Positions 3,718 through 64,000 of a stretch of 64,000 nucleotides of DNA are shown one piece after another (the first letter of the stretch is position 1; each line of letters begins with the position of its first letter). The position numbers and the translations under genes are program-made. The notes under the pieces were generated by a model. It ran no database searches. It had not been told where the DNA came from and was given only the letters and a program-made list of their open reading frames with translations. This stretch comes from Octopus sinensis (lineage: Eukaryota): contig NC_043012.1 of the NCBI RefSeq assembly GCF_006345805.1, positions 37,758,001 through 37,822,000 on the forward strand. The letters are read 5' to 3'.

Positions 3718-5654
3718 GGACCTGTGTATACAGCAATAGTTACTCGACTAATATTTGCAATTTGAACAACTGATGTCAATCAACAAGAAAGTTGTGGCCC
3801 ATTTTTGCATCACTTTCAGTACAATTCTTCTATACGTATGTATGTATATATATATATATATATATCATCCTCATCATTTAACATCCACTTTTCCATGTTT
3901 GCCAGGGGTCAAACAGAATTTGAAGAAGCAGATTTTTTATGGCTGTAGCCAGAGAAAGCAAAGCATTCAATGAAACATTACAGTAATTTACAGACTTATG
4001 GTAATAAGTGCATTATAGTTATCTTGCTACTGAAAGCTCAAAGCTTTGAATATGGCTGCTGGAATATTCACATCTTATGAATCCTCAAAGACATACCTTG
4101 AAAGAAAGCCAATCCTTGTAGCAAAGGAGTTGCTGTGAAATAACATGCATGTGAGGGATAACTTGCCTGAAATGAGATTCTCTGAAGAGAGTCACTTTAC
4201 AGAACATGGTCACCTGATGTCAATGAGGAAGCCATTGTCAGACAATAGATTTGATACCACAGTGAGTGTACATGTGAAGTTAAAATGCCATAAAAAAAGC
4301 TAAATGGCAGTTAGTCACCTGGAACTGATCATTTCTGTAGTGTGATGTTGAAATGTAGAAGTGAAAACTTGCTTTAGTGTCTAACTTAATAAAAAAAAAA
4401 CGTTTGAATTGAAGAGTGTCCCAAATGGTGGGAAAGATGCGTTGATGGTGGTTCACTATAAAAGAAAATGTAGGAAGGACAACAGTGGGAATTAGCATGG
4501 AATATCTCATCTATCTGCTGTAAATTTAGTGTTCATAAGATCTGAGTCTCATTGTTGTTTCAGAAAGGGCAGGAAGGCAAAAGATATGAACTTTTCAGTT
4601 GGGTATCTGCAGGAAAAGTACACTGAGTGCAAGATGAACCTGTATCAAAGGTTTGATCCGAATAAAGCTTTTAATACCGTGAACAGAAATGCCTTATGGA
4701 ACATTCTGAAGCTTGGATGCCCTAAGAAGCTTATCCCTGTGCTTAGATGTTTCCATGATAGAATGAAAACATTTATCAACATGGGTAGTAAGCTCTCCGA
4801 ACCTATTTTGGTTGGAAATGAAGTTAATCAAGGGGTATACCAGTGCCAACTGTTTACATTGTATTCGGTTATGGATTCCTTGATAGCTTTTGAAGATTGC
4901 TTACATGGGGTCTACATTAGATACCAAACAATGAGTTGGATGTTAAATATAAGACAGTTTGCTCATGTCCTCATCACTAAAACACAAATTCCTGTATGCT
5001 GAAGACTGACTTGTCACTCGCTTCCACTGCAACAAGGAGTATCTTATAGACTCCTCAACAACATGCAGTGCATCGGGTCTAGCAATCAGCCTTAAAGAAG
5101 GTAGTTGCAATGTACCAACCTGCATGAGGAAAGAACCTACTCTGAGCCAAACATTTATGGACAGAAAATTGCAGGTCGCATTTAAGCTGTAAAGTGAACA
5201 TGACAAATATTGTTGATGATGAAATATCCCTTTGAATCAAGAAAGCCAGTGATGCAGTCAGAAAATTGGATAGACATTTATAGTCTTAGCACGGAATTTC
5301 AATTGAGACAAAGTTGAAGGTCCACCATACTTGTGTTTTGCCTCAATTGTTATATATGCATGTAAAACCTGGGTTATTTATGAAGATGTGCAAAGGTAGG
5401 AACATGTACATAGGTGACAAAGTCCTGAAACATAGCCAGTCTACTCGCATTTCAGCACCAGTTACAATGGAATAGTTATGTGCTCAGAATGAAAGACAAT
5501 CAGCTCCCTAAACAATTTCTGGATGGTGAATTAGCCTAGAGTAAAAAGCCAGAGCAGAAACAAAAATTAGAGAAGGTAAAAAATCTTCAAAGATGAGTAG
5601 GAAAACCTCATTCTAGATTGTTCCTTATGGAGGAAGGCAGAACAAAATTATATA

Positions 5655-5890
5655 ACATTCTTTACATTCGACAGATATTTGTCATCTTGTTTGTTGTTAA
5701 CACAACGTTTCGGCTGATACACCCTCCAGCCTTCATCAGGTGTCTCGGAGAAATTTCAAACCTGAGTTCTCATTCCTAAGGTATTTTTCAATGTTATTAC
5801 TATTATTGTTATTCAGATCACTGCCTGGAATCGAACTCAGAATCTTGGGGTTAGTAGTCCACGCTCTTAAGCACTATGCATATGGGCATA
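5655..5890 (-). mobile_element. tRNA-headed SINE carrying a hammerhead motif, inserted in an old RTE remnant
   Basis: B box GTTCGATTCC (5827-5836 on -), short (AAT)n linker, body, HHR, AT-rich tail; no LINE-like 3' tail or poly(A). Confidence 0.8.
5699..5744 (-). ncRNA. Minimal type I hammerhead motif, intact core, inside a tRNA-headed SINE
   Basis: GACAC-CUGAUGA-A-GGCUG(GAGGGUGUAU)CAGCC-GAA-ACGU-U-GUGUU. The loopless palindromic stem III (ACGU) implies dimeric folding. Confidence 0.75.
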
Positions 5891-28282: not shown

Positions 28283-28623
28283 GGGTTGTTTTTGATTGGT
28301 TCCAGGGTGGTGTAAATAGATGTGTGTTGTTTAAAGAATTTTTTGGGGTAGGATAGTGTGTGTATATGTGTGCCCATTCGTGTGTGTGTGTGTGTGCGTG
28401 TATGTGTATGGTTAATGTCTATTAGTGTGTTGCGCGTGCGTATGTGTGTATGTGTCTGCTTGCATGTGTGTCCATGTCTGTTGGGTGTATCCGTGCGGCA
28501 TGCGTGTGTTGGCATTGAGTATGTGCTTGTGCGTGTGCGTACACACGGTGTGGGTGCACGCATCCTCGTGTGCGTATATACATGCATACATGTGTCTATG
28601 CGTGTGTGCGGGCCATACATACA

Positions 28624-28663
<40 letters not shown>

Positions 28664-28674
28664 TATATATACAT

Positions 28675-28718
<44 letters not shown>

Positions 28719-28822
28719 TCATCATCATCATTTAATGTCTGTTTTCCATGCTGGCATGGGTTGGTCGGTAATATATATATATATATATATATATATAAAC
28801 ACACACACACATATATATATAT

Positions 28823-30410
28823 CCCTTATCTGGTGGTCGATGCGGAAACTGGAGATTGACGAATGGCTAATAAGGGCTGTACAGGCCCTATACAGAGAGG
28901 CTGTCAGCAAGGTTAGGATTGGCAATGAGTATAGTGAAGAATTCCGGGTAGAATTAGGTGTCCACCAAGGTTCAGCCCTCAGTCCCCTTTTATTCATCAT
29001 AGTCCTCCAGGCAATAACAGAGGAATTCAAAACAGGTTGCCCCTGGGAGCTCCTCTATGCTGATGACCTGGCCCTCATAGCAGAATCACTACCGGAACTA
29101 GAAAAGAAATTTCGGGTGTGGAAGCTCGGTTTAGAATCAAAGGGCCTTAGAGTAAATGTAGCGAAGACCAAAGTTATAGTAAGCAGAAAGGCGACCTCAT
29201 CACACACACCCTCGGGCAGGTGGCCCTGCTCGATCTGTAGGAAAGGTGTAGGTAGAAACTCCATAAGATGCACCCAGTGTAAGCTATGGACGCATAAGAG
29301 GTGCAGCAACATCAAAGGGAAATTAACTGATAAGATAGCTTTCATGTGTGGCAGATGCACAGGGACAATAGACACCACAGATACTCAGAAAACAGATTCC
29401 ATCACACTCTAGGGGAAGAAACTAGAAGTAGTTGATAGTTTCCACTACCTGGGTGACCAAGTTAGTAGTGGAGGTGGATGCTCAGAGAGTGTCACCACTA
29501 GAATACGAATAGCCTGGGCAAAGGGTCTCTCGCTCAGAGTGAAAGATAGATTGTATGATGCATGTGTGCGAACTGCCATGCTTCAGGGTAGTGAAACATG
29601 GGCTGTGACTGCAGAGGACATGCGTAGACTTGAAAGGAATGAAGCTAGCATGATCCGCTGGATGTGTAATGTCAGTGTGCGCGCACGACAGAGGGTAAGC
29701 ACCCTGAGAGAAATGCTGGACATAAGAAGCATCAGATGTGGTGTGCAAGAGAGATGCTTGTGTTGGTATGGTCATGTACTGCGGGTGGATGAGGAGAGAT
29801 GTGTGAAGAAGTGCCACTCCCAAACAGTTGAAGGTATCAGGGGAAGAGGTAGACCCAAGAAGACATGGGATGAGGTAGTCGAGCATGACCTCCGAGCGTT
29901 GGGCCTCACAGAGGCAATGACGAAGGACCGAGATCTCTGGAGATATGCTGTGACTGCAAAGACCCAGGCTGCTTCCTGCTCCAGTTTCACATAGCCCCAG
30001 CCCATTCAAGGTACTTTGGATTGCAGAATGACCTGCTGTGCTTGAGGAGACCTATTGAGTCAAGTACATGAACATCGAAATAAATATCAAATGGAAATAG
30101 TAGTTGTGATACCTGTGCCAGTGGCACGTAAAAAGTACCATCCGAATGTGGCCGATGCCAGCGCCGCCATGACTGGCTTCTGTCCCGGTGGCACGTAAAA
30201 AGCACCATCCGACCGTGACTGCTTGTCTGGCACCTGTGCCGGTGGCACGTAAAAAGCACCCATTACACTCACGGAGTGGTTGGCATTAGGAAGGGCATCC
30301 ACCCGTAGAAACATTGCCAGATCAGACTGGGCCTGGTGCAGCCTCCTGGCTTCCCAGACCCCAGTTGAACCGTCCAACCCATGCTAGTATGGAAAGCGGA
30401 CGCTAAATGA

Positions 30411-37737: not shown

Positions 37738-38390
37738 GATGTGGTTAAGAGCGCAGGCTACGAACCCCAAGATTCCGAGTTTGATTCCAAGCAGTGACCT
37801 GAACAATAACAACAACAACAACAACAACAGCAGCAGCAGCAGCAGCAGCAACAACAACAACAACAATAACAACAACAACAACAACAACAACAATCATCGT
37901 TTAATGTCCGCTTTCCATGCTAGCATGGGTCGGACAATTTGACTGAGGACTGGCGAACCAGATGGCTACACCAGGCTCCAATCTTGATCTGGCAGAGTTT
38001 CTACAGCTGGATGCCCTTCCTAACACCAACCACCCCGAGAGTGTAGTGGGTACTTTTATGTGCCACCGGCATGAGAGCCATTCAGGCAGTACTGGCAATG
38101 GCCATGCTCAAATGGTGTTTTTTAGGTGCTACCTGCACAGGAGCCAGTCCAGCGGCACTGGCAACAACCTCGCTCGAATGCTTTTTCATGTGCCAATAAT
38201 AATAATAATAATAACATCGAAAAATACGTTAGGAATGAGAACCCAGGTTCGAAATTTCCCCAAGACACCTGATGAAGGCTGGAGGGTATATCAGCTGAAA
38301 CATTCTGCTAACAACAAACAAGATGAGGACAAATAGCCATCAAATGCAAATAATGTAAATAAAACCTCATCTCCTTAAATATAGCACTGT
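37738..38390 (+). mobile_element. tRNA-headed HHR-SINE with an RTE-tail element nested in its (AAC)n linker
   Basis: Head 37738-37800 (B-box-like GTTTGATTCC), (AAC/AGC)n, minus-strand RTE-tail insert ~37893-38195, then (AAT)n, body and HHR. Confidence 0.8.
38264..38309 (+). ncRNA. Degenerate hammerhead motif in the tRNA-headed SINE
   Basis: GACAC-CTGATGA-A-GGCTG..CAGCT-GAAAC-ATT-CTGCT: same family as 5699-5744, with stem III and the stem I 3' strand mutated. Confidence 0.55.
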
Positions 38391-40695: not shown

Positions 40696-43600
40696 TCATC
40701 ATCATGGCTCGGCTTCGCAAACGAAGATCAAGAAGGCTGGCCACGTCTTGTGCATGCATATGACTGACAAGTCCAATATGGGAAAGGCAGGTCCGTGAGC
40801 AGTGTCCACAGACGAAGGTAACATCCGGTGTGGTGTCAGAGGCGGCTTGCGCCTTCCTCCTGCGTCTCTTCTATGTTCTTCAATCTTGCTGACTGCGTTG
40901 AAGATCGTGTGGCGCCAGACATCATGGTCCGCAGCCAGGTCTGACCAGCATTGATGATTAATTTGACATGCTGTTAGAGTCTTCTTGAGGCAGTCTTTGT
41001 AGCACTTCCTTGGAGCTCCTCTCACTCGGTGGCCGGTGGAAAGTTCGCCAAACAGAGCAATCTTTGGAAGGCGATGGTTCTCCATTCTGGAGACATGCCC
41101 TGCCCATCGGAGATGGTACTTCAGTAGCGTGGCTTTAATACTGGGGATCTTGGCCTGCTCCAAGACTTCAATGTTTGTGACAAAGTCACTCCAGTGAATG
41201 TTGAGGATGGTGCGGAGACATCGATGGTGGAAGCGCTCGAGGAGACGGATGTGATTGCAGTAAGTGATCCAGGTCTCTGAGCCGTAGAGAAGAGTGGTGA
41301 GAACCACAGCCCTGTAGACACTGATCTGTTTTGTTCTTCAGGCCACCATTGTGCCAAACACGTTTGTACAATCTGCCAAAGGAGCCTTAGAAAATCTATT
41401 GTCAATTTCCTTGTTGATCCTTGCATCGGATGAGATGATGCAGCCCAGGTATGTAAACTGCTGTATTGATTTCAGTTCAGTACCGCAGATAGTGGTGTGG
41501 GGGTGGGCAGTATTCCTCTTGGGGTGTAGGTTGGTGATGTACCTCCGTCTTCTTGAGGCTGACCTCCAGGCCAAAGAGCTGCGAGGCGTCTGCAAAGCAG
41601 GACATGATGCGCTGCAGAGCTCGCTCTGTGTGAGCGACAAGGGCAGTGTCGTCTGCGAAGAGAAGGTCTCGGATCAACCTCTCCTGAGTCTTGGTGTGGA
41701 CTTGGAGGCACCGTAGATTGAAGAGACTGCCATCCAGATGATACCTAACATACACCCCATCCTCATCCTCCATATCTTCAGTTGCATGCTTGATCATCAT
41801 GCTGAAGAAGATGCTGAAGAGAGTCGGTGCCAGAACGCAACCCTGCTTCATGTCGTTGGAAATGGGGAAGGGCTCCGACAGGTCAGCATTGAGTCTGATC
41901 TGACCACACTGATTCTCGTGCAGCTGGATCACCATCTGTAGAAACTTGGTGGGACAGCCAAGTCATTCCAGGATGAGCCATAGTCCTGTCCTATTCACTG
42001 TGTCAAATGCTTTTGTAAGGTTGACAAAAGTAGCATAGAGTCCCCTGTTTTGTTCTCGGCACTTCTCCTGGAGTTGGCGGAGGATGAACACCATATCTGT
42101 TGTGCCTCTGTTGGCTCTGAAGCCACACTGGCTCTTGGGGAGGTTTTCTTCAGCGATGGTTGGAAGTGCTCGGACCAGCGAGCGAGGAGGTCCTGTCTAT
42201 CTGTACCGTGTAGGGGACTCTGGACCAGGTGGGTGGGGCCATACACTGCTTTCAGAGCCTCATAGAAGCCTCTATAGTCTCTGAAGTCAGCACATAGCTG
42301 GGTTCTCCATGCCAGTTGGTCCCACCACTCGTTCTGCATTTGTTTGAGTTTTTGCTGCAGGGTGTTGCATGCGTGCCGAAAGGTAGTTTTCTTCACAAGA
42401 CAGGTTGGTTGTGCGAGGTGGGCCTGATGAGCTGCCCTCTTCCTTGCTAGTAATTCCTGGATCTCCTTGTCATTTTCATCAAACCAGTCCTTGTTTTTCT
42501 TCTTTGTGTGCCCGAGAACTTCCATAGATGTCTTAAGGATGGCTGATTTCAGGTTCTCCCACAAGGTGTCTGGGGTGGTGTCCATCAGTGCAGGGGGATT
42601 TGTCTAGTCTTTGCTGCAGGTTTGTTTGGAACTTGATTTTCACTTCCTCCCGGCACAAGCTGTCGACATTGAGTTTCCTTATGGGATTACCTTTCTTCTT
42701 GGGTTTGGACAAGGTGATGGTCAGTGTGGCACTCTGCACTGGGCATCACTCTTGTGTGTAGAACGTCTTTCAGGTCCCGCTGTCGCACAAGCACATAGTC
42801 AAGTAGATGCCAATGCTTGGACCGGGGATGCATCAAAGTTGTTTTCAGACGGTCTTTCTGTTGGAAGATTGTGTTGGTAATAGCAAGTTGGTGCTCTGTG
42901 CAGAACTCAAGCAGGAGGTGCCCGTTGTCATTAAAGCCACCAATGCCGTGTCTTCCAAGGACTCCTTTCCAAACCTCAGAGTCCTTCCCAACTCTTGCGT
43001 TGAAATCGCCAAGGATCAGGACCTTGTCGTTTGCAGGGGTGTTGTTCAAGAGTCTGAGCAGATCAAAATAGAAGCTGTCTTTGTCCGCGGGATCTGCCAG
43101 TAGAGTTGGAGCATAAACACTGAAGAGAGTGAGATGTTGTTTGCTCTCCAGTGGTAGGCGCATGGATATGATGCGGTCTGAGTGGCCTGTGGGTAACGTT
43201 TTCAGTTTGGAGGTGATGGAATTCCTCACCACGAGTCCTACACCCGACACACGTTTTTCAGATGATGGTTTTCTGGATCAGAAGAGCGTGTAGCCAGCAC
43301 CGCGTTCTTTGAGGCTGCCCTCGTCAGCGAAGTGGACCTTGCTGAGAGCTGCTATGTCAATGTTGAGACGGGAGAGTTCATGGGCTATGAGAGCCGAATG
43401 ACGTTCCGGGCGGCTGCTGTCAGCCTTGTCAAGCGTGGTCCTGACATTCCAGCAGGCAACTTTCAACTCCTTTTTACTTTTCTTCGGTTTTGTTTCCATG
43501 TTTGTTCGACCGCTCTGAAGATGCCCGTTGACTGCGGTTAGCCAACTGGGTATAGAGGAGACAAGCTTTGTTTAGGCAAACCTTTTCTACTGCCCCTCTC

Positions 43601-45749: not shown

Positions 45750-45814
45750 ATGCCAGCCGCAACTTGTTGTGTTGTCGGTTGCAACAATCGACATTCGTCG
45801 AGCCAGAAATTACG
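45750..45814 (+). CDS. THAP zinc-finger gene, coding exon 1 (MPAATCCVVGCNNRHSSSQKL-R)
   Basis: ATG at 45750 with A at -3 and an in-frame TGA upstream (45735-37). CC-x3-C start typical of THAP domains. Phase-2 donor CG|GTTTGT at 45815. Confidence 0.9.
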
Positions 45815-48900: not shown

Positions 48901-49708
48901 CTTTAAATTCTGTGATTGCTTATTTTTTAGAATGACATTGTAGAGTTGGTGAGATGCCGGGTCTGGTCAGTTTGAATATAAAACTGGTAGAATTGGCCAG
49001 TTTAAATGCTACGCTCTTAGATATAATGCTCATTTATTCACATTATTTTGAATTAATCATGCAATATTTTGTAGCTTTGAGGCTTCAATGCTGTAATTCT
49101 TTATTTTTTTGAATGACATTACAGAACCAGTGTGATAGGCCAGACCAGGCCGATTTGAGCCCAAAATAGGTAAAATGTTTGGGTTAGATATGGCTATATG
49201 GCTGGTTCAAATGCTAATTGGCTAAAAAACACTTGGATTTTTTTTTTTCGTTTTTGTCTGAAATTTTAGCCGTAGTCTTCTTGGAACAGATATATTAATC
49301 AACTCCACTGTGCCTGATATTGAAGACACTGTCTGCTAAAAGATTACAAGGCCAGCATTAAATTGAATGAAATACAGATATATCATATTTTGAATCTCAA
49401 AAATTACCAATTCATATTTTTCCACTTGCAGTTATTAAATTACTAAAACTGATGAAACAGTATATTAAAGTATGTTCCTCTCAGTGGTAGGTAGTGGTGG
49501 TCTCCTATTGTATATGTACAAAAACCAGAGATTTATGTATCTGTAGGTGCAGGCGTGGCTGTATGGTAAGAAGCTTGCTTCCCAACCACATGGTTCCAGG
49601 TTCAATCCCACTGCATGGCATCTTGGGCAAGTGTCTTCTACAATAGCCCCAGGCTGACCTAAGCCTTGTATGTGCATTTGGTAGACAGAAACTGAAAGAA
49701 GCTCGTCG

Positions 49709-49741
<33 letters not shown>

Positions 49742-49766
49742 GTATATATATGTATGTATGTATGTG

Positions 49767-50342
49767 TACAAACGTCAGGTAAGGGTCCTTGAACGTTTTC
49801 ATCAGAGATGTCTCAGACACATTCACAATGTTGGCTGGACCTCAAAAATTCCAGACACACAGATCCTAAGGACAGCTGATATCTTGAGTATTGAGATGAT
49901 GGTGCACAAGCACCAGTTGTGTTGGACTGGACACCTTATTAGAATGGGAGGATAGAAGGATTCCTAAGCAGATGCTCTATGGAGAACTTGTGAATGGAAG
50001 GAGACTCCGGCAGAAACCAAGGCTGCGATTTAAGGACTGTGTAAAGTCTTCATTAAAGGCCTGTGATATGCAGGACACTGACTGGGAGAACAATGCCTGC
50101 ACTTTTGAGAGAGCACGTATCCAGCATGAAGGACTTAAGCAAGCTGCGCGAAAGCACATGGCTCGTATAGTGAATGGGGAAAGCTTGGTCTGCAATGTTT
50201 GCAGTCGTGTATGCTTGTCAAGAGCAGGGCTCATTAGCCACCAACGGAGCTGCAAATGCAAAATATAAGTTAGTCCTAGAGCGCACAATGTTCCTGAAGG
50301 TCGGCAATGGTCTTCCTCGGTCACGAGTGGATGGCCATCATG
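49767..50342 (+). mobile_element. BovB-like RTE 3' fragment inserted in the internal microsatellite of a SINE
   Basis: [41 protein letters not shown] head at ~49550-49710 and SINE tail at ~50575-50750 flank it. Confidence 0.88.
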
Positions 50343-52206: not shown

Positions 52207-52480
52207 ATTTTACCGAATTCCAAGAGGAAAGTACCAGCGGAGCAAGTTCATCAAGAAAATTGGCCTGCCTAATAATTGGCTTCCAAATAACAGCACCTGG
52301 ATCTGTTCGGTGCACTTTAAGTCTGGGAAAATCAGCAAAAACCGTCATGATGTGGATTATATTCCGACACTGCTTGTGGACGCAGCAAGGGACAGTGAGA
52401 AAGTGGTGAAGTTCCCAGCCACCAAATGTTTGTCAAATTCTGAGCTACTAGAAGGAGCATTCAGGGATCACATTACACAT
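52207..52480 (+). CDS. THAP gene exon 2 (FYRIPRGKYQRSKFIKKIGLPNNWLPNNSTWICSVHFKSGKISKNRHDVDYIPTLL...AFRDHITH)
   Basis: Acceptor tttttttgacacAG; 274 nt = 1 + 91 codons, matching the phase-2 donor of exon 1. Supplies the conserved P, C-x2-H-F and an AVPTIF-like box (YIPTLL). Donor CAT|GTAAAT. Confidence 0.92.
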
Positions 52481-53309: not shown

Positions 53310-53565
53310 TCATCATCATCGTTTAACGTCCACTTTCCATGCTAGCATGGGTTGGACGATTGACTGAGTTCTGGCGAACCAGATGGCTGCACCAGACTCC
53401 AATCTGATCTGGCAGAGTTTCTACAGCTGGATGCCCTTCCTAATGCCAACCACTCCGAGAGTGTAGTGGGTGCTTTTACATGCCACCAGCATGAAGGCCA
53501 GTCAGGCGGTACTGGCATCGGCCATGCTCAAATGGTGCTTTTTATGTGCCACCTGCACAAGAGCC
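53310..53565 (-). mobile_element. Short element matching the 3' tail of the 28.8-kb RTE LINE (representative copy)
   Basis: Reverse complement of AGGAAGGGCATCCAGC..AACCGTCCAACCCATGCTAGCATGGAAAG..TTAAACGATGATGATG. Copies near 715, 1415, 2030, 8810, 28716, 33740, 37893, 51850 and 56810. Confidence 0.85.
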
Positions 53566-54109: not shown

Positions 54110-54308
54110 CTGATTGATGAGGCTAGCATCATGCTGGAACGCAGAGAACAAGAACACTTGACTCAGTCGCTGCTATTCCATGATTATCTTGCCACTAAAA
54201 CAGTTTCCACATCTCATTTACATCCTGACAATCCAACCATGAACCCTTGGATCACTGTCAACACACTCGAGCAACGAACTCCAAGCAGACTCCCTAAACA
54301 TCATACAG
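54110..54308 (+). CDS. THAP gene exon 3 (LIDEASIMLERREQEHLTQSLLFHDYLATK...LPKHHT)
   Basis: Acceptor ctattctcttgcAG, phase 0; 199 nt open frame (part of ORF 54104-54391); strong donor CAG|GTGAGT, phase 1. Confidence 0.85.
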
Positions 54309-55106: not shown

Positions 55107-55158
<52 letters not shown>

Positions 55159-55162
55159 AATA

Positions 55163-55658
55163 TATATATACCAATTAAGGACTGAACACGAAAAAGTGGA
55201 CAGTCAACATGCTAGATATAGACGTCAAATCGCCATTCTCCACAAAAGATTATGTTCTCAGATCAAACTCAACACAAACCCAAGCAATAAACAAGTGAAA
55301 ATATACGAAAAATAATACTCAAGGTGAAAGGCATTTGAAATACACATTCGGATGTAATCGGTTGAACTCTACGCACGTGATGATACTCCGGTATCGTTTT
55401 TGCATCTAGTTCAGCAGATTTCATTCAGACCGGCCATGCTGATGAAGACTACGGGTATCCTTACAGATAATAATAGTCGAAACTGATTCAGTACATGGAT
55501 GAGTATTATTTTTCGTATATTTTCACTTGTTTATTGCTTGGGTTTGTGTTGAGTTTGATCTGAGAACATAATCTTTTGTGGAGAATGGCGATTTGACGTC
55601 TATATCTAGCATGTTGACTGTCCACTTTTTCGTGTTCAGTCCTTAATTGGTATATATA
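55163..55658. repeat. Fold-back element: ~158-bp inverted arms with a 180-nt spacer containing the HHR
   Basis: 55163-55320 is the reverse complement of 55501-55658 (no mismatch seen); flanked by (TA)n. Penelope-like origin is inferred. Confidence 0.9.
55434..55498 (+). ncRNA. Type I hammerhead ribozyme motif, complete, in THAP intron 3
   Basis: CCAUG-CUGAUGA-A-GACUA..UAGUC-GAA-ACUG(AUU)CAGU-A-CAUGG. Stems I, II and III all pair; GUA cleavage triplet ends at 55493. Confidence 0.85.
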
Positions 55659-57239
55659 AATATTTAATCTTCGGATTTTTTTAATATGTTAGACCACTGG
55701 TTTTAATTGATAAATATTGATTTCTACCCTTAATTAATTATATATAAATATATATATATATATATATGTACACTTATATAAATTTTATACACCTCATGCA
55801 TTGTATCTCTGTATCCATACGTATGTACAGTGAGCCTTTATTCACACTTCATTGGTACATGTATATATATATATATATACACACGTGTGTTTGTGTGTGT
55901 TGAAATGGATTTTGTTGTATCTTATGAGGTGGGGGTTATTATGCCAATAATAAACACACACTGGTTCTGTTTCACTTCAGTATTATTCATCAATTCGTTA
56001 GCTATTTAACTAATTAACTAATCAACTGGTTGATTAATCATTCGGTTAATTGGTCAGTCAGTCATGTGTGTCAAAGTCCTTTCATCACCATTTGGGCCAT
56101 CAACAATGAGATGCCTTCTCTGCTTCAGGTCTGTCTGTTTGTCTTTTAGTTTTGGTTTCAGTAATTCTATAGTTTTATGGTTGTGGGTGGGAATGTATGC
56201 GAGGAGGAGACAAACAGATCTAAAAGACAGACACACAGACACATGAAGCTGACCTGGAGAGGAGAAAACATGTTATTGAAGAGGTTGCAAATGACAAAGA
56301 AAAGGACCTTCACAAACACAATTGATTAATTGATTTACTAAATGATTATTGAAACAATTGATGAGTTATTTTGGTGAAACGGTCAACCAACCGACAAATA
56401 ACCAAGGTTAGCTTAAAAGCCGCACTCTGTGCTGACTTTTAGGTTAGCTCTTGGGGAAGACCAATTTGGCCAGTGGTCCAAAACTAGGGAGATCCATAAG
56501 GATAAAACATTTACTGGTACCCAACCAATGTGGTATTACTTTTAATTTAGTTTAAATGAAAAACTTGTAAGTTCACAAACTTTTGGAGTTCTTTTAAAAT
56601 TTGAATCTTCAACTGTTAGCTTATAACGATTCCTCATCCAGACCTGATCCCAATGCTGGATGTTCAAGAGCTAAATTAAGGGCAGATTTTCATTTTCGGG
56701 ATCATCCTGACTCCAAAAGGGGATAATATGTCTATGTAGAGCAAATGTAGACATATACAGGGGTGTATCCTGGATGGACAGATGGGCAGACAGAAATCTG
56801 CATTTATTCATCATCATCATTTAACATCCGCTTTCCATGCTAGCATGGGTTGGATGATTTGACTGAGGAATGGCGAACCAGATGGCTGCACCAGGCTCCA
56901 ATCTGATCTGGCAGAGTTTCTACAGCTGGATGCCCTTCCTAATGCCAACCACTCTGAGAGTGTAAGATGTGAAACTGAACCACTGCATGTCTCTATTATT
57001 GGCCTACTGACCCCTCCCAAAATACAACGGCAATCTAGGGATAATTCCATCAAGGTTGACTTTGCCTTTCATCCTTTCAGGATTGATAAAATAAGTATCG
57101 GTTGCATACTGGGGTCGTTGTAATCGACTTAATTCCTTCCTTTGAAATTACTGTGCCAAAATTTGAAGCCAGTCTCGGAATATATATTCTTCAGTAATTG
57201 TTATCTGACATCTTTTGTGTGTCTCTTGCTGTTTTCCAG

Positions 57240-57327
57240 ATGACTGTGGTGTTTATTTTGGTAACAACATAACACAGAAACATGGAGAAAATAAGTCTAA
57301 GCCAGAAATCAAAGAAGATAACCTTGA
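57240..57327 (+). CDS. THAP gene exon 4 (D-DCGVYFGNNITQKHGENKSKPEIKEDNL-E)
   Basis: Acceptor gtctcttgctgttttccAG; 88 nt = 2+84+2, open in the phase-1 frame. Donor GA|GTAAGG; if the intron is retained the frame ends GAG TAA. Confidence 0.75.
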
Positions 57328-63094: not shown

Positions 63095-63240
63095 TTACAT
63101 TATTTACATTTGATGGATATTTCTCCTCATCTTGTTTGTTGTTAACACAATTGTTTTGGCTGATATACCTTCCAGCCTTCATCAGGTGTCTTGGGGGAAT
63201 TTCGAACCTGGGTTCTCATCCCTAAGGTATTTTTCGATAT

Positions 63241-63284
<44 letters not shown>

Positions 63285-63290
63285 ACACCA
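63095..63290 (-). mobile_element. HHR-SINE copy, head missing, (TAC)n linker on the + strand
   Basis: Same body and tail sequence as the copies at 1850, 5655 and 38200. Confidence 0.75.
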
Positions 63291-63353
63291 CCAACACCAC
63301 CACCCAAGACACCTGATGAAGGCTGGAGGGTATATCAGCCAAAATGTTGTGTT
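63144..63353. repeat. Inverted pair of degenerate SINE hammerhead segments
   Basis: 63144-63190 (-) and 63308-63353 (+) are ~50-bp inverted copies; both have GAAAC mutated (AAAAC, AAAAT), consistent with CpG decay. Confidence 0.7.
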
Positions 63354-64000
63354 ACTCGGATCATAACTCACTTTGGTCAAGGCTTAGTGGCATTTCTTCT
63401 GACTTGACGTTCTGAGTTCAAATACTGCTAGAGTCATCCTTACATTTCATCCTTTCAGGATGAATTAAATAAGTATCAGTTGAACACTGGGGTCATCCCT
63501 GAAATTGCTGGCCTTGTGCCGAAATTTGAAACCAATATTTTTTAATATTTAGATTAAAACACACCACAATGTTAAGTCCATATTTATTTTGTTTCAATGG
63601 TTTGGACATTTTCCTTCAGTCCATTCTTTTTCTTCGCAATCACTCATCTAATTACATTTTCATATTCATTCTCTGCTCTCTTTCCTCTTTATTTTGTTAT
63701 TTTGTTTATCAATTTAAGTATTATGGTCTCTTGATAGTATTACAAGCACAACATCGATTTTCCAGAACTTTCCGTTCCAAAGTCATTCTCGATTACTCAT
63801 TTTTTCCAAACCAGGGATGGACCACATTGGTCAACATACTCCAAATTAAACAAATATTAAAACTGATTAAATAATTTAATGAAATGAAGTACATTAATAT
63901 AAATGATACAAGTTTATTAATACTGTACTGTGCAAGGTATTAATTAGTGCATGGTACCAATAAACTAGTCTGGTGTCGACCGGAAACTGAAGTTCCTGCT

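What the first reader, a model, noticed from the sequence alone, without database searches (positions are those of the whole stretch)
55434..55498. Complete canonical hammerhead ribozyme in the sense strand of THAP intron 3
Seen: stem I CCAUG/CAUGG, core CUGAUGA (+1 A), stem II GACUA/UAGUC with an inner UAUC/GAUA hairpin, GAA, stem III ACUG-AUU-CAGU (also near-palindromic, so dimer-competent) and a GUA cleavage site after 55493. It lies in the spacer of a 158-bp inverted repeat, which should sequester the flanks and leave the ribozyme free to fold. Inference: the THAP pre-mRNA could be cut co-transcriptionally within intron 3, affecting splicing of exon 4 or releasing an intronic RNA.
Basis: partly seen in the sequence, partly recalled or inferred. 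Interest (0 to 1): 0.85.

Follow-up and report, generated by a model that had tools for sequence, protein, structure and literature searches.

The report
Transposon-borne hammerhead ribozyme in octopus intron
The hammerhead self-cleaving RNA motif is really there and is not a chance match, but it looks like the kind carried by Penelope-like retrotransposons, sitting in a young hairpin-shaped insertion in an intron of an octopus-like THAP gene, so it is an ordinary mobile-element ribozyme rather than a device of the host gene.

Summary
The sequence is as described. Window 55434-55498 (+) holds every conserved hammerhead core base, three helices in type I topology, one extra A between A9 and G10.1, and a GUA cleavage site after 55493. 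It lies in the 178-nt spacer of a 162-nt, 99% inverted repeat set in a (TA)n tract. No match this good appeared in 6000 shuffled windows.

"Canonical" is overstated. No Rfam hammerhead model matches. As a monomer helix III is almost unpopulated, and two copies are predicted to form a double hammerhead.

The features match those published for Penelope-like element (PLE) hammerheads: short helix I, long helix II, an unpaired base after A9, G10.1-C11.1, and a palindromic helix III. The hairpin in (TA)n also fits the known PLE insertion pattern of two 5'-truncated copies placed head to head.

The same window holds four copies of a second, SINE-like repeat with a minimal hammerhead that shares CUGAUGA-A-G. 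The window is octopus-like, and octopus genomes carry recently active PLEs.

Three THAP exons with good splice sites lie upstream on the + strand, so "sense strand, intron 3" is plausible. Exon 4 was not found.

No other copy of the element could be retrieved, so a MITE origin is not excluded. Cleavage is untested and is expected to be weak for a lone copy.

The parts
55110..55170 (.). (TA)n microsatellite, the left flank and probable insertion target
   Evidence: Tandem Repeats Finder reports period 2 with 30.5 copies. TATATATA also follows the right arm, so a target-site duplication cannot be read.
55160..55321 (-). Left arm of the inverted repeat. It is read as an inverted, 5'-truncated copy of the element's 3' end. 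The first 11 nt are TA repeat, and unique sequence starts with CCAATTAAGG at 55171.
   Evidence: 162 nt, 99% complementary to 55500-55661. 159 nt are 100% identical.
55322..55433 (+). 5' part of the spacer, with no long open reading frame. It is read as continuous with the hammerhead and the right arm in one 340-nt + strand copy.
   Evidence: No similar sequence elsewhere in the window.
55434..55438 (+). Hammerhead helix I, 5' strand (CCAUG, positions 2.5-2.1)
   Evidence: Pairs with 55494-55498. Pair probabilities are 0.59-0.98 in the 65-mer.
55439..55446 (+). Core C3 U4 G5 A6 U7 G8 A9 plus one unpaired A before G10.1
   Evidence: An unpaired base at this place is a conserved hallmark of PLE hammerheads (PMC4209133).
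55447..55478 (+). Helix II: GACUA/UAGUC (G10.1-C11.1 at its base), a 4x4 internal loop, an inner UAUC/GAUA stem and a CUUACA loop
   Evidence: Pair probabilities are 0.83-0.95.
55479..55481 (+). Core G12 A13 A14
55482..55492 (+). Helix III, ACUG-AUU-CAGU (A15.1 to U16.1), palindromic except for the central U
   Evidence: The hairpin is worth only -0.5 kcal/mol, against -11.3 for the intermolecular duplex. The dimer minimum-energy fold is a double hammerhead. Monomer pair probability is 0.026.
55493..55493 (+). A17. The predicted cleavage is 3' of this base (GUA triplet), between 55493 and 55494.
   Evidence: Position follows from the hammerhead numbering applied. Cleavage itself was not tested.
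55494..55498 (+). Helix I, 3' strand (CAUGG, positions 1.1-1.5). It ends 1 nt before the right arm.
55500..55661 (+). Right arm of the inverted repeat, read as the 3' end of the + strand copy
45750..45814 (+). Context: THAP gene exon 1 (MPAATCCVVGCNNRHSSSQKL, with a GT donor)
   Evidence: Joined to exon 2 it completes the THAP domain.
52207..52480 (+). Context: THAP gene exon 2
   Evidence: Pfam THAP, 27.4 bits alone and 47.6 bits when joined to exon 1. Splice sites are shown.
54110..54308 (+). Context: putative THAP gene exon 3. Its frame continues from exon 2, and its donor opens the intron that would hold the element.
   Evidence: Acceptor tctcttgcag| and donor CAG|GTGAGT. The reading frame is open throughout.

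Best explanation
The motif is a genuine type I hammerhead ribozyme of the kind carried by Penelope-like retroelements (PLEs) and the non-autonomous elements they mobilise. It arrived as part of a young retroelement insertion into a (TA)n tract.

The insertion is read as two 5'-truncated copies of the element's 3' end, placed head to head with their 3' ends outward. A 162-nt copy lies on the - strand (left arm). A 340-nt copy lies on the + strand (spacer plus right arm). Only the longer copy reaches back far enough to include the hammerhead, which starts 228 nt and ends 163 nt from the 3' end.

In the life cycle of such elements the ribozyme cuts multimeric transcripts into unit lengths. It works mainly as a double hammerhead, formed through the palindromic helix III of two neighbouring copies.

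At this locus there is one copy. It is transcribed, if at all, as part of an intron of a THAP gene in the sense direction. It is expected to cleave weakly or not at all, and any effect on the THAP pre-mRNA is a side effect of the insertion.

What is shown: the motif, its statistical excess, its predicted folding, the inverted repeat, the (TA)n context and the gene strand. What is inferred: PLE ancestry, the two-copy reading of the hairpin, and the level of activity.
For: 1. All core positions and three helices are present. No equally good match occurred in 6000 shuffles.

2. The four sequence traits that Cervera & de la Pena list as emergent hallmarks of PLE hammerheads are all met. These are an unpaired base between 9 and 10.1, G10.1-C11.1, a palindromic 15.2-16.2/loop 3, and a short helix I with a long helix II (PMC4209133; sequence).

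3. Predicted folding matches dimer-dependent hammerheads. The monomer hammerhead fold is -11.5 against an MFE of -13.0 kcal/mol, and helix III has probability 0.026. The two-copy MFE is a double hammerhead at -33.3, against 2 x -13.0.

4. The insertion anatomy matches published PLE insertions. These show 5' truncation, an inverted 5'-truncated copy immediately adjacent giving inverted repeats, (TA)n targets and the hammerhead near the 3' end (PMC8557442). Solitary motifs from truncated PLEs are reported as the common case.

5. The same window holds a second hammerhead-bearing repeat family. The motif at 5699-5744 (-) is GACAC|CUGAUGA|A|GGCUGG..UCAGCC|GAAA|CG|UU|GUGUU. It has four copies, and one pair at 63097-63354 lies head to head on opposite strands. 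This family shares with the candidate the extra A, U7, C10.3-U10.4 and a GGGUAU stretch in loop 2. Helix II differs by two paired G-C to A-U changes.

6. The host is octopus-like. Octopus vulgaris has 30 recently active Penelope families (PMC13282606).

7. The arms are 159/159 identical, so the insertion is young. The intact core therefore needs no selection at this locus.
Against: - No reverse transcriptase or GIY-YIG reading frame adjoins the element.
- No second copy of it exists in the window.
- No relative was found in JGI metagenomes, the protein collections, prokaryotic genomes (one chance 20-mer) or viral contigs. Family membership therefore rests on architecture, not homology.
- Long perfect terminal inverted repeats flanked by TATATATA on both sides are equally what a MITE or foldback DNA transposon looks like.
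- No Rfam hammerhead model matches. The control shows these models are insensitive: a clear type I hammerhead in L009 scores only 14.8 bits against a gathering score of 34.
- The similarity to the second family is post hoc and partly forced by the descriptor.
- Self-cleavage is untested.
Confidence: 0.6

Rival explanations
1. The 502-bp element is a MITE or foldback DNA transposon, with 160-bp terminal inverted repeats and a TA or 8-bp TATATATA target duplication. Its internal region carries the hammerhead, either captured from a retroelement or as a functional part of the MITE's transcript.
For: The arms are near-perfect 162-nt inverted repeats. TATATATA lies on both sides. Octopus genomes hold many recently active TIR elements and MITEs (PMC13282606).
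Against: The (TA)n context makes any target duplication unreadable. The termini (CCAATTAAGG...) match no superfamily signature that I know of (own knowledge, not tested). There are no subterminal direct repeats. My two literature searches found no report of a hammerhead inside a MITE. The hammerhead's traits are those of retroelement ribozymes.
Confidence: 0.2
2. The motif is a chance match with no ribozyme ancestry or activity, inside an unrelated repeat.
For: No homologue was found and no Rfam model matches. The MFE fold is a competing structure, and the fold z-score is only -0.72. In a genome of a few gigabases, roughly one match of this quality could arise by chance. That figure is an extrapolation.
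Against: No equal match in 6000 shuffled windows. Traits not required by the descriptor are also present: the extra base, G10.1-C11.1 and the palindromic helix III. Hammerhead-bearing repeats are dense in this very window, with four copies of another family. The prior for a real transposon hammerhead therefore far exceeds the chance rate.
Confidence: 0.1
3. The ribozyme has been taken over by the host. It cuts the THAP pre-mRNA co-transcriptionally in intron 3 to regulate splicing or to release an intronic RNA. This is the first reader's reading, analogous to the conserved intronic hammerheads of amniotes.
For: The motif is in sense orientation relative to THAP exons 1-3. The arms are predicted to pair, leaving the hammerhead helices partly formed.
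Against: The arms are 159/159 identical, so the insertion is too young to show conservation. There is a single copy with a weak helix III. Single PLE-type motifs were inactive in vitro. In Xenopus, retrozyme copies are depleted from introns, which suggests such insertions are selected against rather than recruited (bioRxiv 10.64898/2026.07.22.740005). Exon 4 was not found.
Confidence: 0.07
4. The 65-mer is an intronic C/D box snoRNA, with C box UGAUGA at 55440-55445, D box CUGA at 55483-55486 and a terminal stem CCAUG/CAUGG.
For: Weak Rfam matches to four C/D families on the + strand, 7-15 bits with E values of 4-9. An intronic location is typical of animal snoRNAs.
Against: All scores are far below the gathering scores (39-60) and at chance E-values. 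The base before UGAUGA is C, not a purine. The D box lies 7 nt from the terminal stem, against 1 nt for the C box. There are no C'/D' boxes. The C and D box letters are already contained in the hammerhead core and helix III.
Confidence: 0.03

Closest known systems
Hammerheads of Penelope-like elements (min-HHRs and their variants with a small palindromic helix III; Cervera & de la Pena 2014, PMC4209133)
   Same: Type I topology and a 5-bp helix I without a defined loop 1. A long helix II and an unpaired base between A9 and G10.1. G10.1-C11.1 and a palindromic helix III, with a predicted double-hammerhead dimer. Occurrence as a solitary motif in a truncated, inverted insertion.
   Different: Helix III is a real 4-bp stem with a 3-nt loop, rather than 0-2 bp. 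Helix II carries a 4x4 internal loop and a second stem. No PLE reading frame or pseudo-LTR is present, and no family of copies was found.
Metazoan non-LTR retrozymes (tandem 170-400 bp repeats with type I hammerheads, expressed as circular RNAs; Cervera & de la Pena 2020, PMC7229834)
   Same: A type I hammerhead in a short, AT-rich, non-coding mobile repeat of an invertebrate. The mollusc examples also lack the classical loop 1-loop 2 contacts.
   Different: Here there is no tandem array. There is one hammerhead in an inverted, not direct, repeat.
Conserved intronic hammerheads of amniotes (HH9/HH10; De la Pena & Garcia-Robles 2010, PMC2933863, listed; details from my own knowledge)
   Same: A type I hammerhead on the sense strand of an intron of a protein-coding gene.
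   Different: Those are conserved across amniotes and keep the loop-loop tertiary contacts, and Rfam models exist for them. This one is a young insertion with no shown conservation and no Rfam match.
The SINE-like repeat with a minimal hammerhead in this same window (5699-5744 - and three more copies). It is comparable in kind to the Schistosoma Sm-alpha SINE hammerhead (own knowledge).
   Same: CUGAUGA-A-G, U7, C10.3-U10.4, GGGUAU in loop 2, a 5-bp helix I and head-to-head inverted copies.
   Different: There is no sequence similarity outside the ribozyme. In that family helix III is reduced to the palindrome CG. Several of its copies are decayed, with G12 changed to A.

Membership tests
Hammerhead ribozyme (motif level) | Conserved core: C3 U4 G5 A6 N7 G8 A9, G12 A13 A14, A15.1-U16.1, H17 | tested here: met
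   All positions are present at 55439-55445, 55479-55482 and 55492-55493. One extra A follows A9.
Hammerhead ribozyme (motif level) | Three helices around the core | tested here: met
   Helix I has 5 bp, helix II has 5 bp plus an inner 4 bp, and helix III has 4 bp. Helix I is open, which makes it type I. Helix III has probability 0.026 in the monomer and 0.37 in the whole element.
Hammerhead ribozyme (motif level) | Match to a curated Rfam hammerhead covariance model (types I, II, III, HH9, HH10, RAGATH-1) | tested here: not met
   No hammerhead hit at gathering score or at E<=10, even on 83 nt. The control shows low sensitivity: none of the 11 pattern-matched motifs in the metagenomic loci reached a gathering score. 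The one re-scanned at E<=10 (L009) scored only 14.8 bits against 34.
Hammerhead ribozyme (motif level) | Mg2+-dependent self-cleavage 3' of H17, giving 5'-OH and 2',3'-cyclic phosphate ends | not testable with these tools
   Needs transcription and cleavage assays.
Hammerhead ribozyme (motif level) | Loop 1-loop 2 tertiary contacts that give fast cleavage in vivo | tested here: inconclusive
   Helix I has no loop or bulge within 5 bp. It is followed by a G.A mismatch and 2 more pairs. No recognisable contact motif is present, and such contacts are also absent in published PLE and mussel hammerheads.
PLE-type hammerhead | [quoted passage not shown] | tested here: met
   A at 55446. The feature is defined in PMC4209133.
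PLE-type hammerhead | Palindromic 15.2-16.2 and loop 3, with a dimeric active form | tested here: met
   CUGAUUCAG is its own reverse complement except for the central base. The two-copy MFE is a double hammerhead at -33.3 kcal/mol.
PLE-type hammerhead | Short helix I (4-5 bp) and enlarged helix II with G10.1-C11.1 | tested here: met
   Helix I has 5 bp. Helix II has 5+4 bp and starts with G-C.
PLE-type hammerhead | Location in the terminal repeat of an element that encodes RT and GIY-YIG endonuclease, or in a truncated copy of one | tested here: inconclusive
   There is no such reading frame next to the element and no other copy in the window. The anatomy fits a truncated inverted PLE insertion in (TA)n, but homology to a PLE could not be tested.
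PLE-type hammerhead | Membership of a multi-copy consensus family in the genome with compensatory changes | not testable with these tools
   The source genome is not available. Searches of the available collections found no relative.
Non-LTR retrozyme | Head-to-tail tandem repeats, each with a hammerhead | tested here: not met
   There is no tandem array other than (TA)n and no direct repeat of the unit.
MITE / foldback DNA transposon | Terminal inverted repeats | tested here: met
   162 nt at 99%.
MITE / foldback DNA transposon | Target-site duplication of fixed length, and many full-length copies | tested here: inconclusive
   TATATATA lies on both sides, but inside a TA microsatellite. There is no other copy in the window, and the genome is not available.
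C/D box snoRNA | C box RUGAUGA and D box CUGA brought together by an adjacent terminal stem, with a guide to rRNA | tested here: not met
   The boxes are present only as parts of the hammerhead core. C precedes UGAUGA, the D box is 7 nt from the stem, and Rfam scores of 7-15 bits fall far below thresholds of 39-60. Guide complementarity was not tested.

The most novel reading that the evidence does not exclude
The hairpin element is not a retroelement fragment. It is instead a DNA-transposon-like foldback/MITE family that carries its own working hammerhead. Its transcript would be a 160-bp perfect double-stranded hairpin that the ribozyme cuts exactly at the base of the 3' arm (55493/55494, 6 nt before the arm). 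That would separate the two arms and so control whether the intronic RNA enters the Dicer or ADAR pathways. It would be a new pairing of a self-cleaving ribozyme with an inverted-repeat mobile element, possibly exploited by the host THAP gene.
Probability: 0.08. Interest if true: 0.7.

Novelty: new member of a known kind. Interest (0 to 1): 0.3.

Why it matters
Type I hammerheads carried by Penelope-like elements and retrozymes are known in their thousands in many animal genomes, so one more copy is not surprising. This case has modest value in four ways.

First, it documents such ribozymes in an octopus-like genome. My two literature searches found no description of hammerheads in octopus, and only Rfam hit counts for the giant squid.

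Second, it is an intact, very young copy, which suggests that the source element is or recently was active.

Third, it shows that curated Rfam models miss both this variant and the minimal-hammerhead repeat in the same window. Standard annotation will therefore undercount them.

Fourth, if the lone copy does cleave, a sense-strand ribozyme together with a 160-bp perfect hairpin in an intron would be a natural test case. It would show how a host gene tolerates co-transcriptional RNA cutting and double-stranded RNA.

Tried and rejected
- **Rfam scans.** At gathering score and at E<=10 on 64 kb, 621 nt and 83 nt there was no hammerhead hit. I did not take this as refutation. None of the 11 pattern-matched hammerhead motifs from metagenomes reached a gathering score. 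The one re-scanned at E<=10 scored only 14.8 bits against 34.
- **Other copies in the window.** BLASTN with word sizes 7-9 found none.
- **Exact-product look-up** of the 51-aa reading frame in the element: not on record.
- **Metagenome pattern scan** (CTGATGA N0-1 GACTA N10-40 TAGTCGAAAC) gave 11 loci. Most are complete type I hammerhead motifs and none is related to this element. Five have a U at the extra position.
- **Exhaustive HMMER search** with the arm-encoded 47-aa peptide against 1.84 billion representative proteins: 0 hits.
- **Word-indexed search** with the 42-aa frame that spans the hammerhead: nothing.
- **Scan of prokaryotic genomes** with a 20-mer gave one match in a Rickettsiella MAG. 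It has no hammerhead context, and about one match is expected by chance.
- **Viral contig scan** with an arm 25-mer: 0.
- **Homologue search with THAP exon 2** to recover a gene model: nothing. The gene structure had to be built by hand, and exon 4 remains unidentified.
- **snoRNA reading:** considered and rejected.
- **tRNA-derived head for the second repeat:** ARAGORN found no tRNA.
- **Assembly artefact:** considered and set aside, because the palindrome has a 178-nt unique spacer and lies inside normal flanks. This is my own judgement.

Full report
**Observation.** The + strand at 55434-55498 reads CCAUG-CUGAUGA-A-GACUA-(CGGG UAUC CUUACA GAUA AUAA)-UAGUC-GAA-ACUG-AUU-CAGU-A-CAUGG. In hammerhead numbering this gives:
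- helix I of 5 bp, left open, which makes it type I
- C3 U4 G5 A6 U7 G8 A9, then one unpaired A
- helix II starting with G10.1-C11.1, then G12 A13 A14
- helix III from A15.1 to U16.1 (4 bp with a 3-nt loop)
- A17 as the cleavage-site base, so the predicted cut lies between 55493 and 55494

The motif sits at the 3' edge of the 178-nt spacer of an inverted repeat, 55160-55321 / 55500-55661. The repeat is 162 nt at 99%, and 159 nt are 100% identical. The element is embedded in a (TA)n tract.

**Is it more than chance?** A type I descriptor of my own finds only this site in the window on both strands. Among 6000 dinucleotide-preserving shuffles of the window:
- 116 had some hit to the relaxed descriptor
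- 19 had a hit with helices of at least 5/4/3 bp
- none had a hit as good as the observed one (0 of 600)

Extrapolated to a genome of gigabases, about one such match could arise by chance. The statistic alone is therefore strong for this window but not absolute.

**How canonical is it?** No Rfam hammerhead family matches at gathering score, nor at E<=10 on 621 nt or on 83 nt. I checked how much that means. Of 11 metagenomic loci carrying matches to my hammerhead pattern, none of the matched motifs reached a gathering score. One unrelated type II hammerhead on the same contig as L009 did. A textbook type I motif in L009 scored only 14.8 bits against a threshold of 34. The Rfam negative is thus weak evidence, but it does show that this motif departs from the curated families.

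The minimum-energy fold of the 65-mer is a competitor, in which CUGA of the core pairs with UCAG of helix III. It scores -13.0 kcal/mol against -11.5 for the hammerhead fold. Helix III has a probability of 0.026, while helices I and II are well populated. The helix III hairpin is worth -0.5 kcal/mol. The same 11 nt form an intermolecular duplex of -11.3, and the predicted fold of two copies is a double hammerhead at -33.3 against -26.0 for two monomers. In a fold of the whole 502-nt element the arms pair, and helices I, II and III have probabilities of 0.3-0.5, 0.93 and 0.37.

**What kind of hammerhead is it?** Cervera & de la Pena (PMC4209133) describe the hammerheads of Penelope-like elements (PLEs) as follows:
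- type I motifs with a short helix I (4-5 bp) and a poorly defined loop 1
- an enlarged helix II
- a conserved unpaired base between positions 9 and 10.1
- a conserved G10.1-C11.1
- palindromic 15.2-16.2 and loop 3
- designed to act as dimers, with no detectable cleavage as single motifs
- mostly found as solitary copies from truncated PLEs, sometimes as pairs on opposite strands 100-700 bp apart

The candidate meets every one of these sequence traits.

Craig et al. (PMC8557442) describe PLE insertions as heavily 5'-truncated. They often have an inverted 5'-truncated copy immediately adjacent, which creates inverted repeats. They prefer (TA)n targets and carry the hammerhead near the 3' end.

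The element here fits that picture if it is read as two copies with their 3' ends outward. One is a 162-nt copy on the - strand. The other is a 340-nt copy on the + strand, and only this one reaches the hammerhead.

**Support from the same window.** A minimal-hammerhead descriptor finds a second motif at 5699-5744 (-): GACAC-CUGAUGA-A-GGCUGG-AGGGUGUA-UCAGCC-GAAA-CG-U-U-GUGUU. Such matches are expected 0.059 times per shuffled window. At the observed quality they appeared in 3 of 2000 shuffles.

The motif belongs to a roughly 170-bp SINE-like repeat with four hammerhead-bearing copies (5708-5739 -, 38269-38300 +, 63154-63185 -, 63313-63344 +) and one copy with the motif deleted. Two copies carry G12 changed to A, so the family is decaying. 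The pair at 63097-63354 lies head to head on opposite strands, like the arms of the candidate element.

The two hammerheads share the extra A, U7, C10.3-U10.4 and GGGUAU in loop 2. Their helix II differs by two paired G-C to A-U changes. This is suggestive of relatedness, but it is post hoc, and pairing was required by my descriptor.

**Host and gene context.** LINE reading frames in the window are 60-75% identical to Octopus bimaculoides proteins. Octopus vulgaris has 30 recently active Penelope families as well as active TIR elements and MITEs (PMC13282606).

On the + strand I could build three exons of a THAP gene:
- 45750-45814 (MPAATCCVVGCNNRH...)
- 52207-52480
- 54110-54308, with acceptor tctcttgcag| and donor CAG|GTGAGT

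Exons 1 and 2 joined give a complete THAP domain (47.6 bits, E 2.9e-12). The frame is still open at the exon 3 donor, so a fourth exon must follow. The only candidates with a good acceptor and 25 or more codons lie beyond the element, at 57240, 59255 and 61892. "Sense strand of intron 3" is therefore plausible but not demonstrated.

**Most likely mechanism.** The ribozyme is part of the life cycle of a PLE-type retroelement. In tandem or multimeric transcripts, two copies pair through helix III and cut the RNA to unit length. At this locus a single, recently inserted copy is a passenger in the THAP intron. The arms are 159/159 identical, so the intact core reflects youth, not selection.

As a monomer it should cleave poorly. 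From my own knowledge of work with engineered intronic ribozymes, slow cleavage is outrun by splicing and has little effect on the mRNA. That point is inference.

The 160-bp perfect hairpin is itself a likely substrate for ADAR and Dicer, which is also inference. In Xenopus, retrozyme copies are depleted from introns. This fits such insertions being mildly harmful rather than recruited.

**Rivals.**
- *MITE or foldback DNA transposon carrying the motif.* This cannot be excluded. The (TA)n context hides any target duplication, and no other copy could be retrieved.
- *Pure chance.* This is unlikely given the shuffles and the density of hammerhead repeats here.
- *Host-recruited ribozyme.* There is no evidence of conservation.
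- *C/D box snoRNA.* This rests only on box letters that the hammerhead core already contains, and on Rfam scores at chance level.

**Verdict.** The finding is a new member of a known kind, a retroelement-type hammerhead in an octopus-like genome, of modest interest. The decisive test is a search of the source genome for further copies, followed by monomer and dimer cleavage assays.

Noticed in passing
window 5699-5744 (-); also 38269-38300 (+), 63154-63185 (-), 63313-63344 (+); repeat units about 5646-5816, 38195-38362, 63097-63248, 63304-63354; deleted copy 1883-2029: A roughly 170-bp SINE-like repeat family carries a minimal hammerhead: helix I GACAC/GUGUU, CUGAUGA plus an extra A, helix II GGCUGG/UCAGCC, and GAAA-CG-UU. 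Two copies have G12 changed to A. In six-frame translations it shows up as the recurring peptide PDEGWRVYQPK. Rfam does not detect it.
   Followed up: partly
window 63097-63354: Two copies of that repeat lie head to head on opposite strands, separated by a (TAC)n/(CCA)n tract. Their hammerheads are 128 nt apart. This is the arrangement reported for truncated Penelope-like insertions.
   Followed up: partly
window 45750-45814, 52207-52480, 54110-54308 (+): A three-exon start of a THAP-domain gene can be built by hand. Exon 3 contains FHDY, which is close to the HCF-1 binding motif [DE]HxY of THAP proteins (own knowledge). No homologue of exon 2 was found in the 5.8-billion protein collection.
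   Followed up: partly
window 40705-43571 (-): A near-complete non-LTR retrotransposon with endonuclease and reverse-transcriptase frames broken by frameshifts (Pfam Exo_endo_phos_2). It lies in the G+C-richest part of the window (0.51). Further LINE fragments are at 4496-4999 (+), 28519-29991 (+) and 49647-50265 (+).
   Followed up: no
window 53345-53527 (-), 56820-57068 (-), 37947-38100 (+), 30090-30383 (-): Another dispersed repeat is recognisable by the peptide SEWLALGRASSCRNSARSDWSLVQPSGSP in translation. It is probably a second SINE family.
   Followed up: no
L002, L004, L006, L010, L011 (metagenome contigs): Five of the eleven hammerhead-pattern matches pulled from JGI metagenomes have a U between A9 and G10.1. 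An extra base at this place is therefore not rare in nature. None reaches an Rfam gathering score.
   Followed up: partly
L009 1506-1570 (-) and 3092-3172 (+): One metagenome contig carries a type II hammerhead (Rfam 45.8 bits) and, 1.5 kb away on the other strand, a type I hammerhead that Rfam scores below threshold.
   Followed up: no
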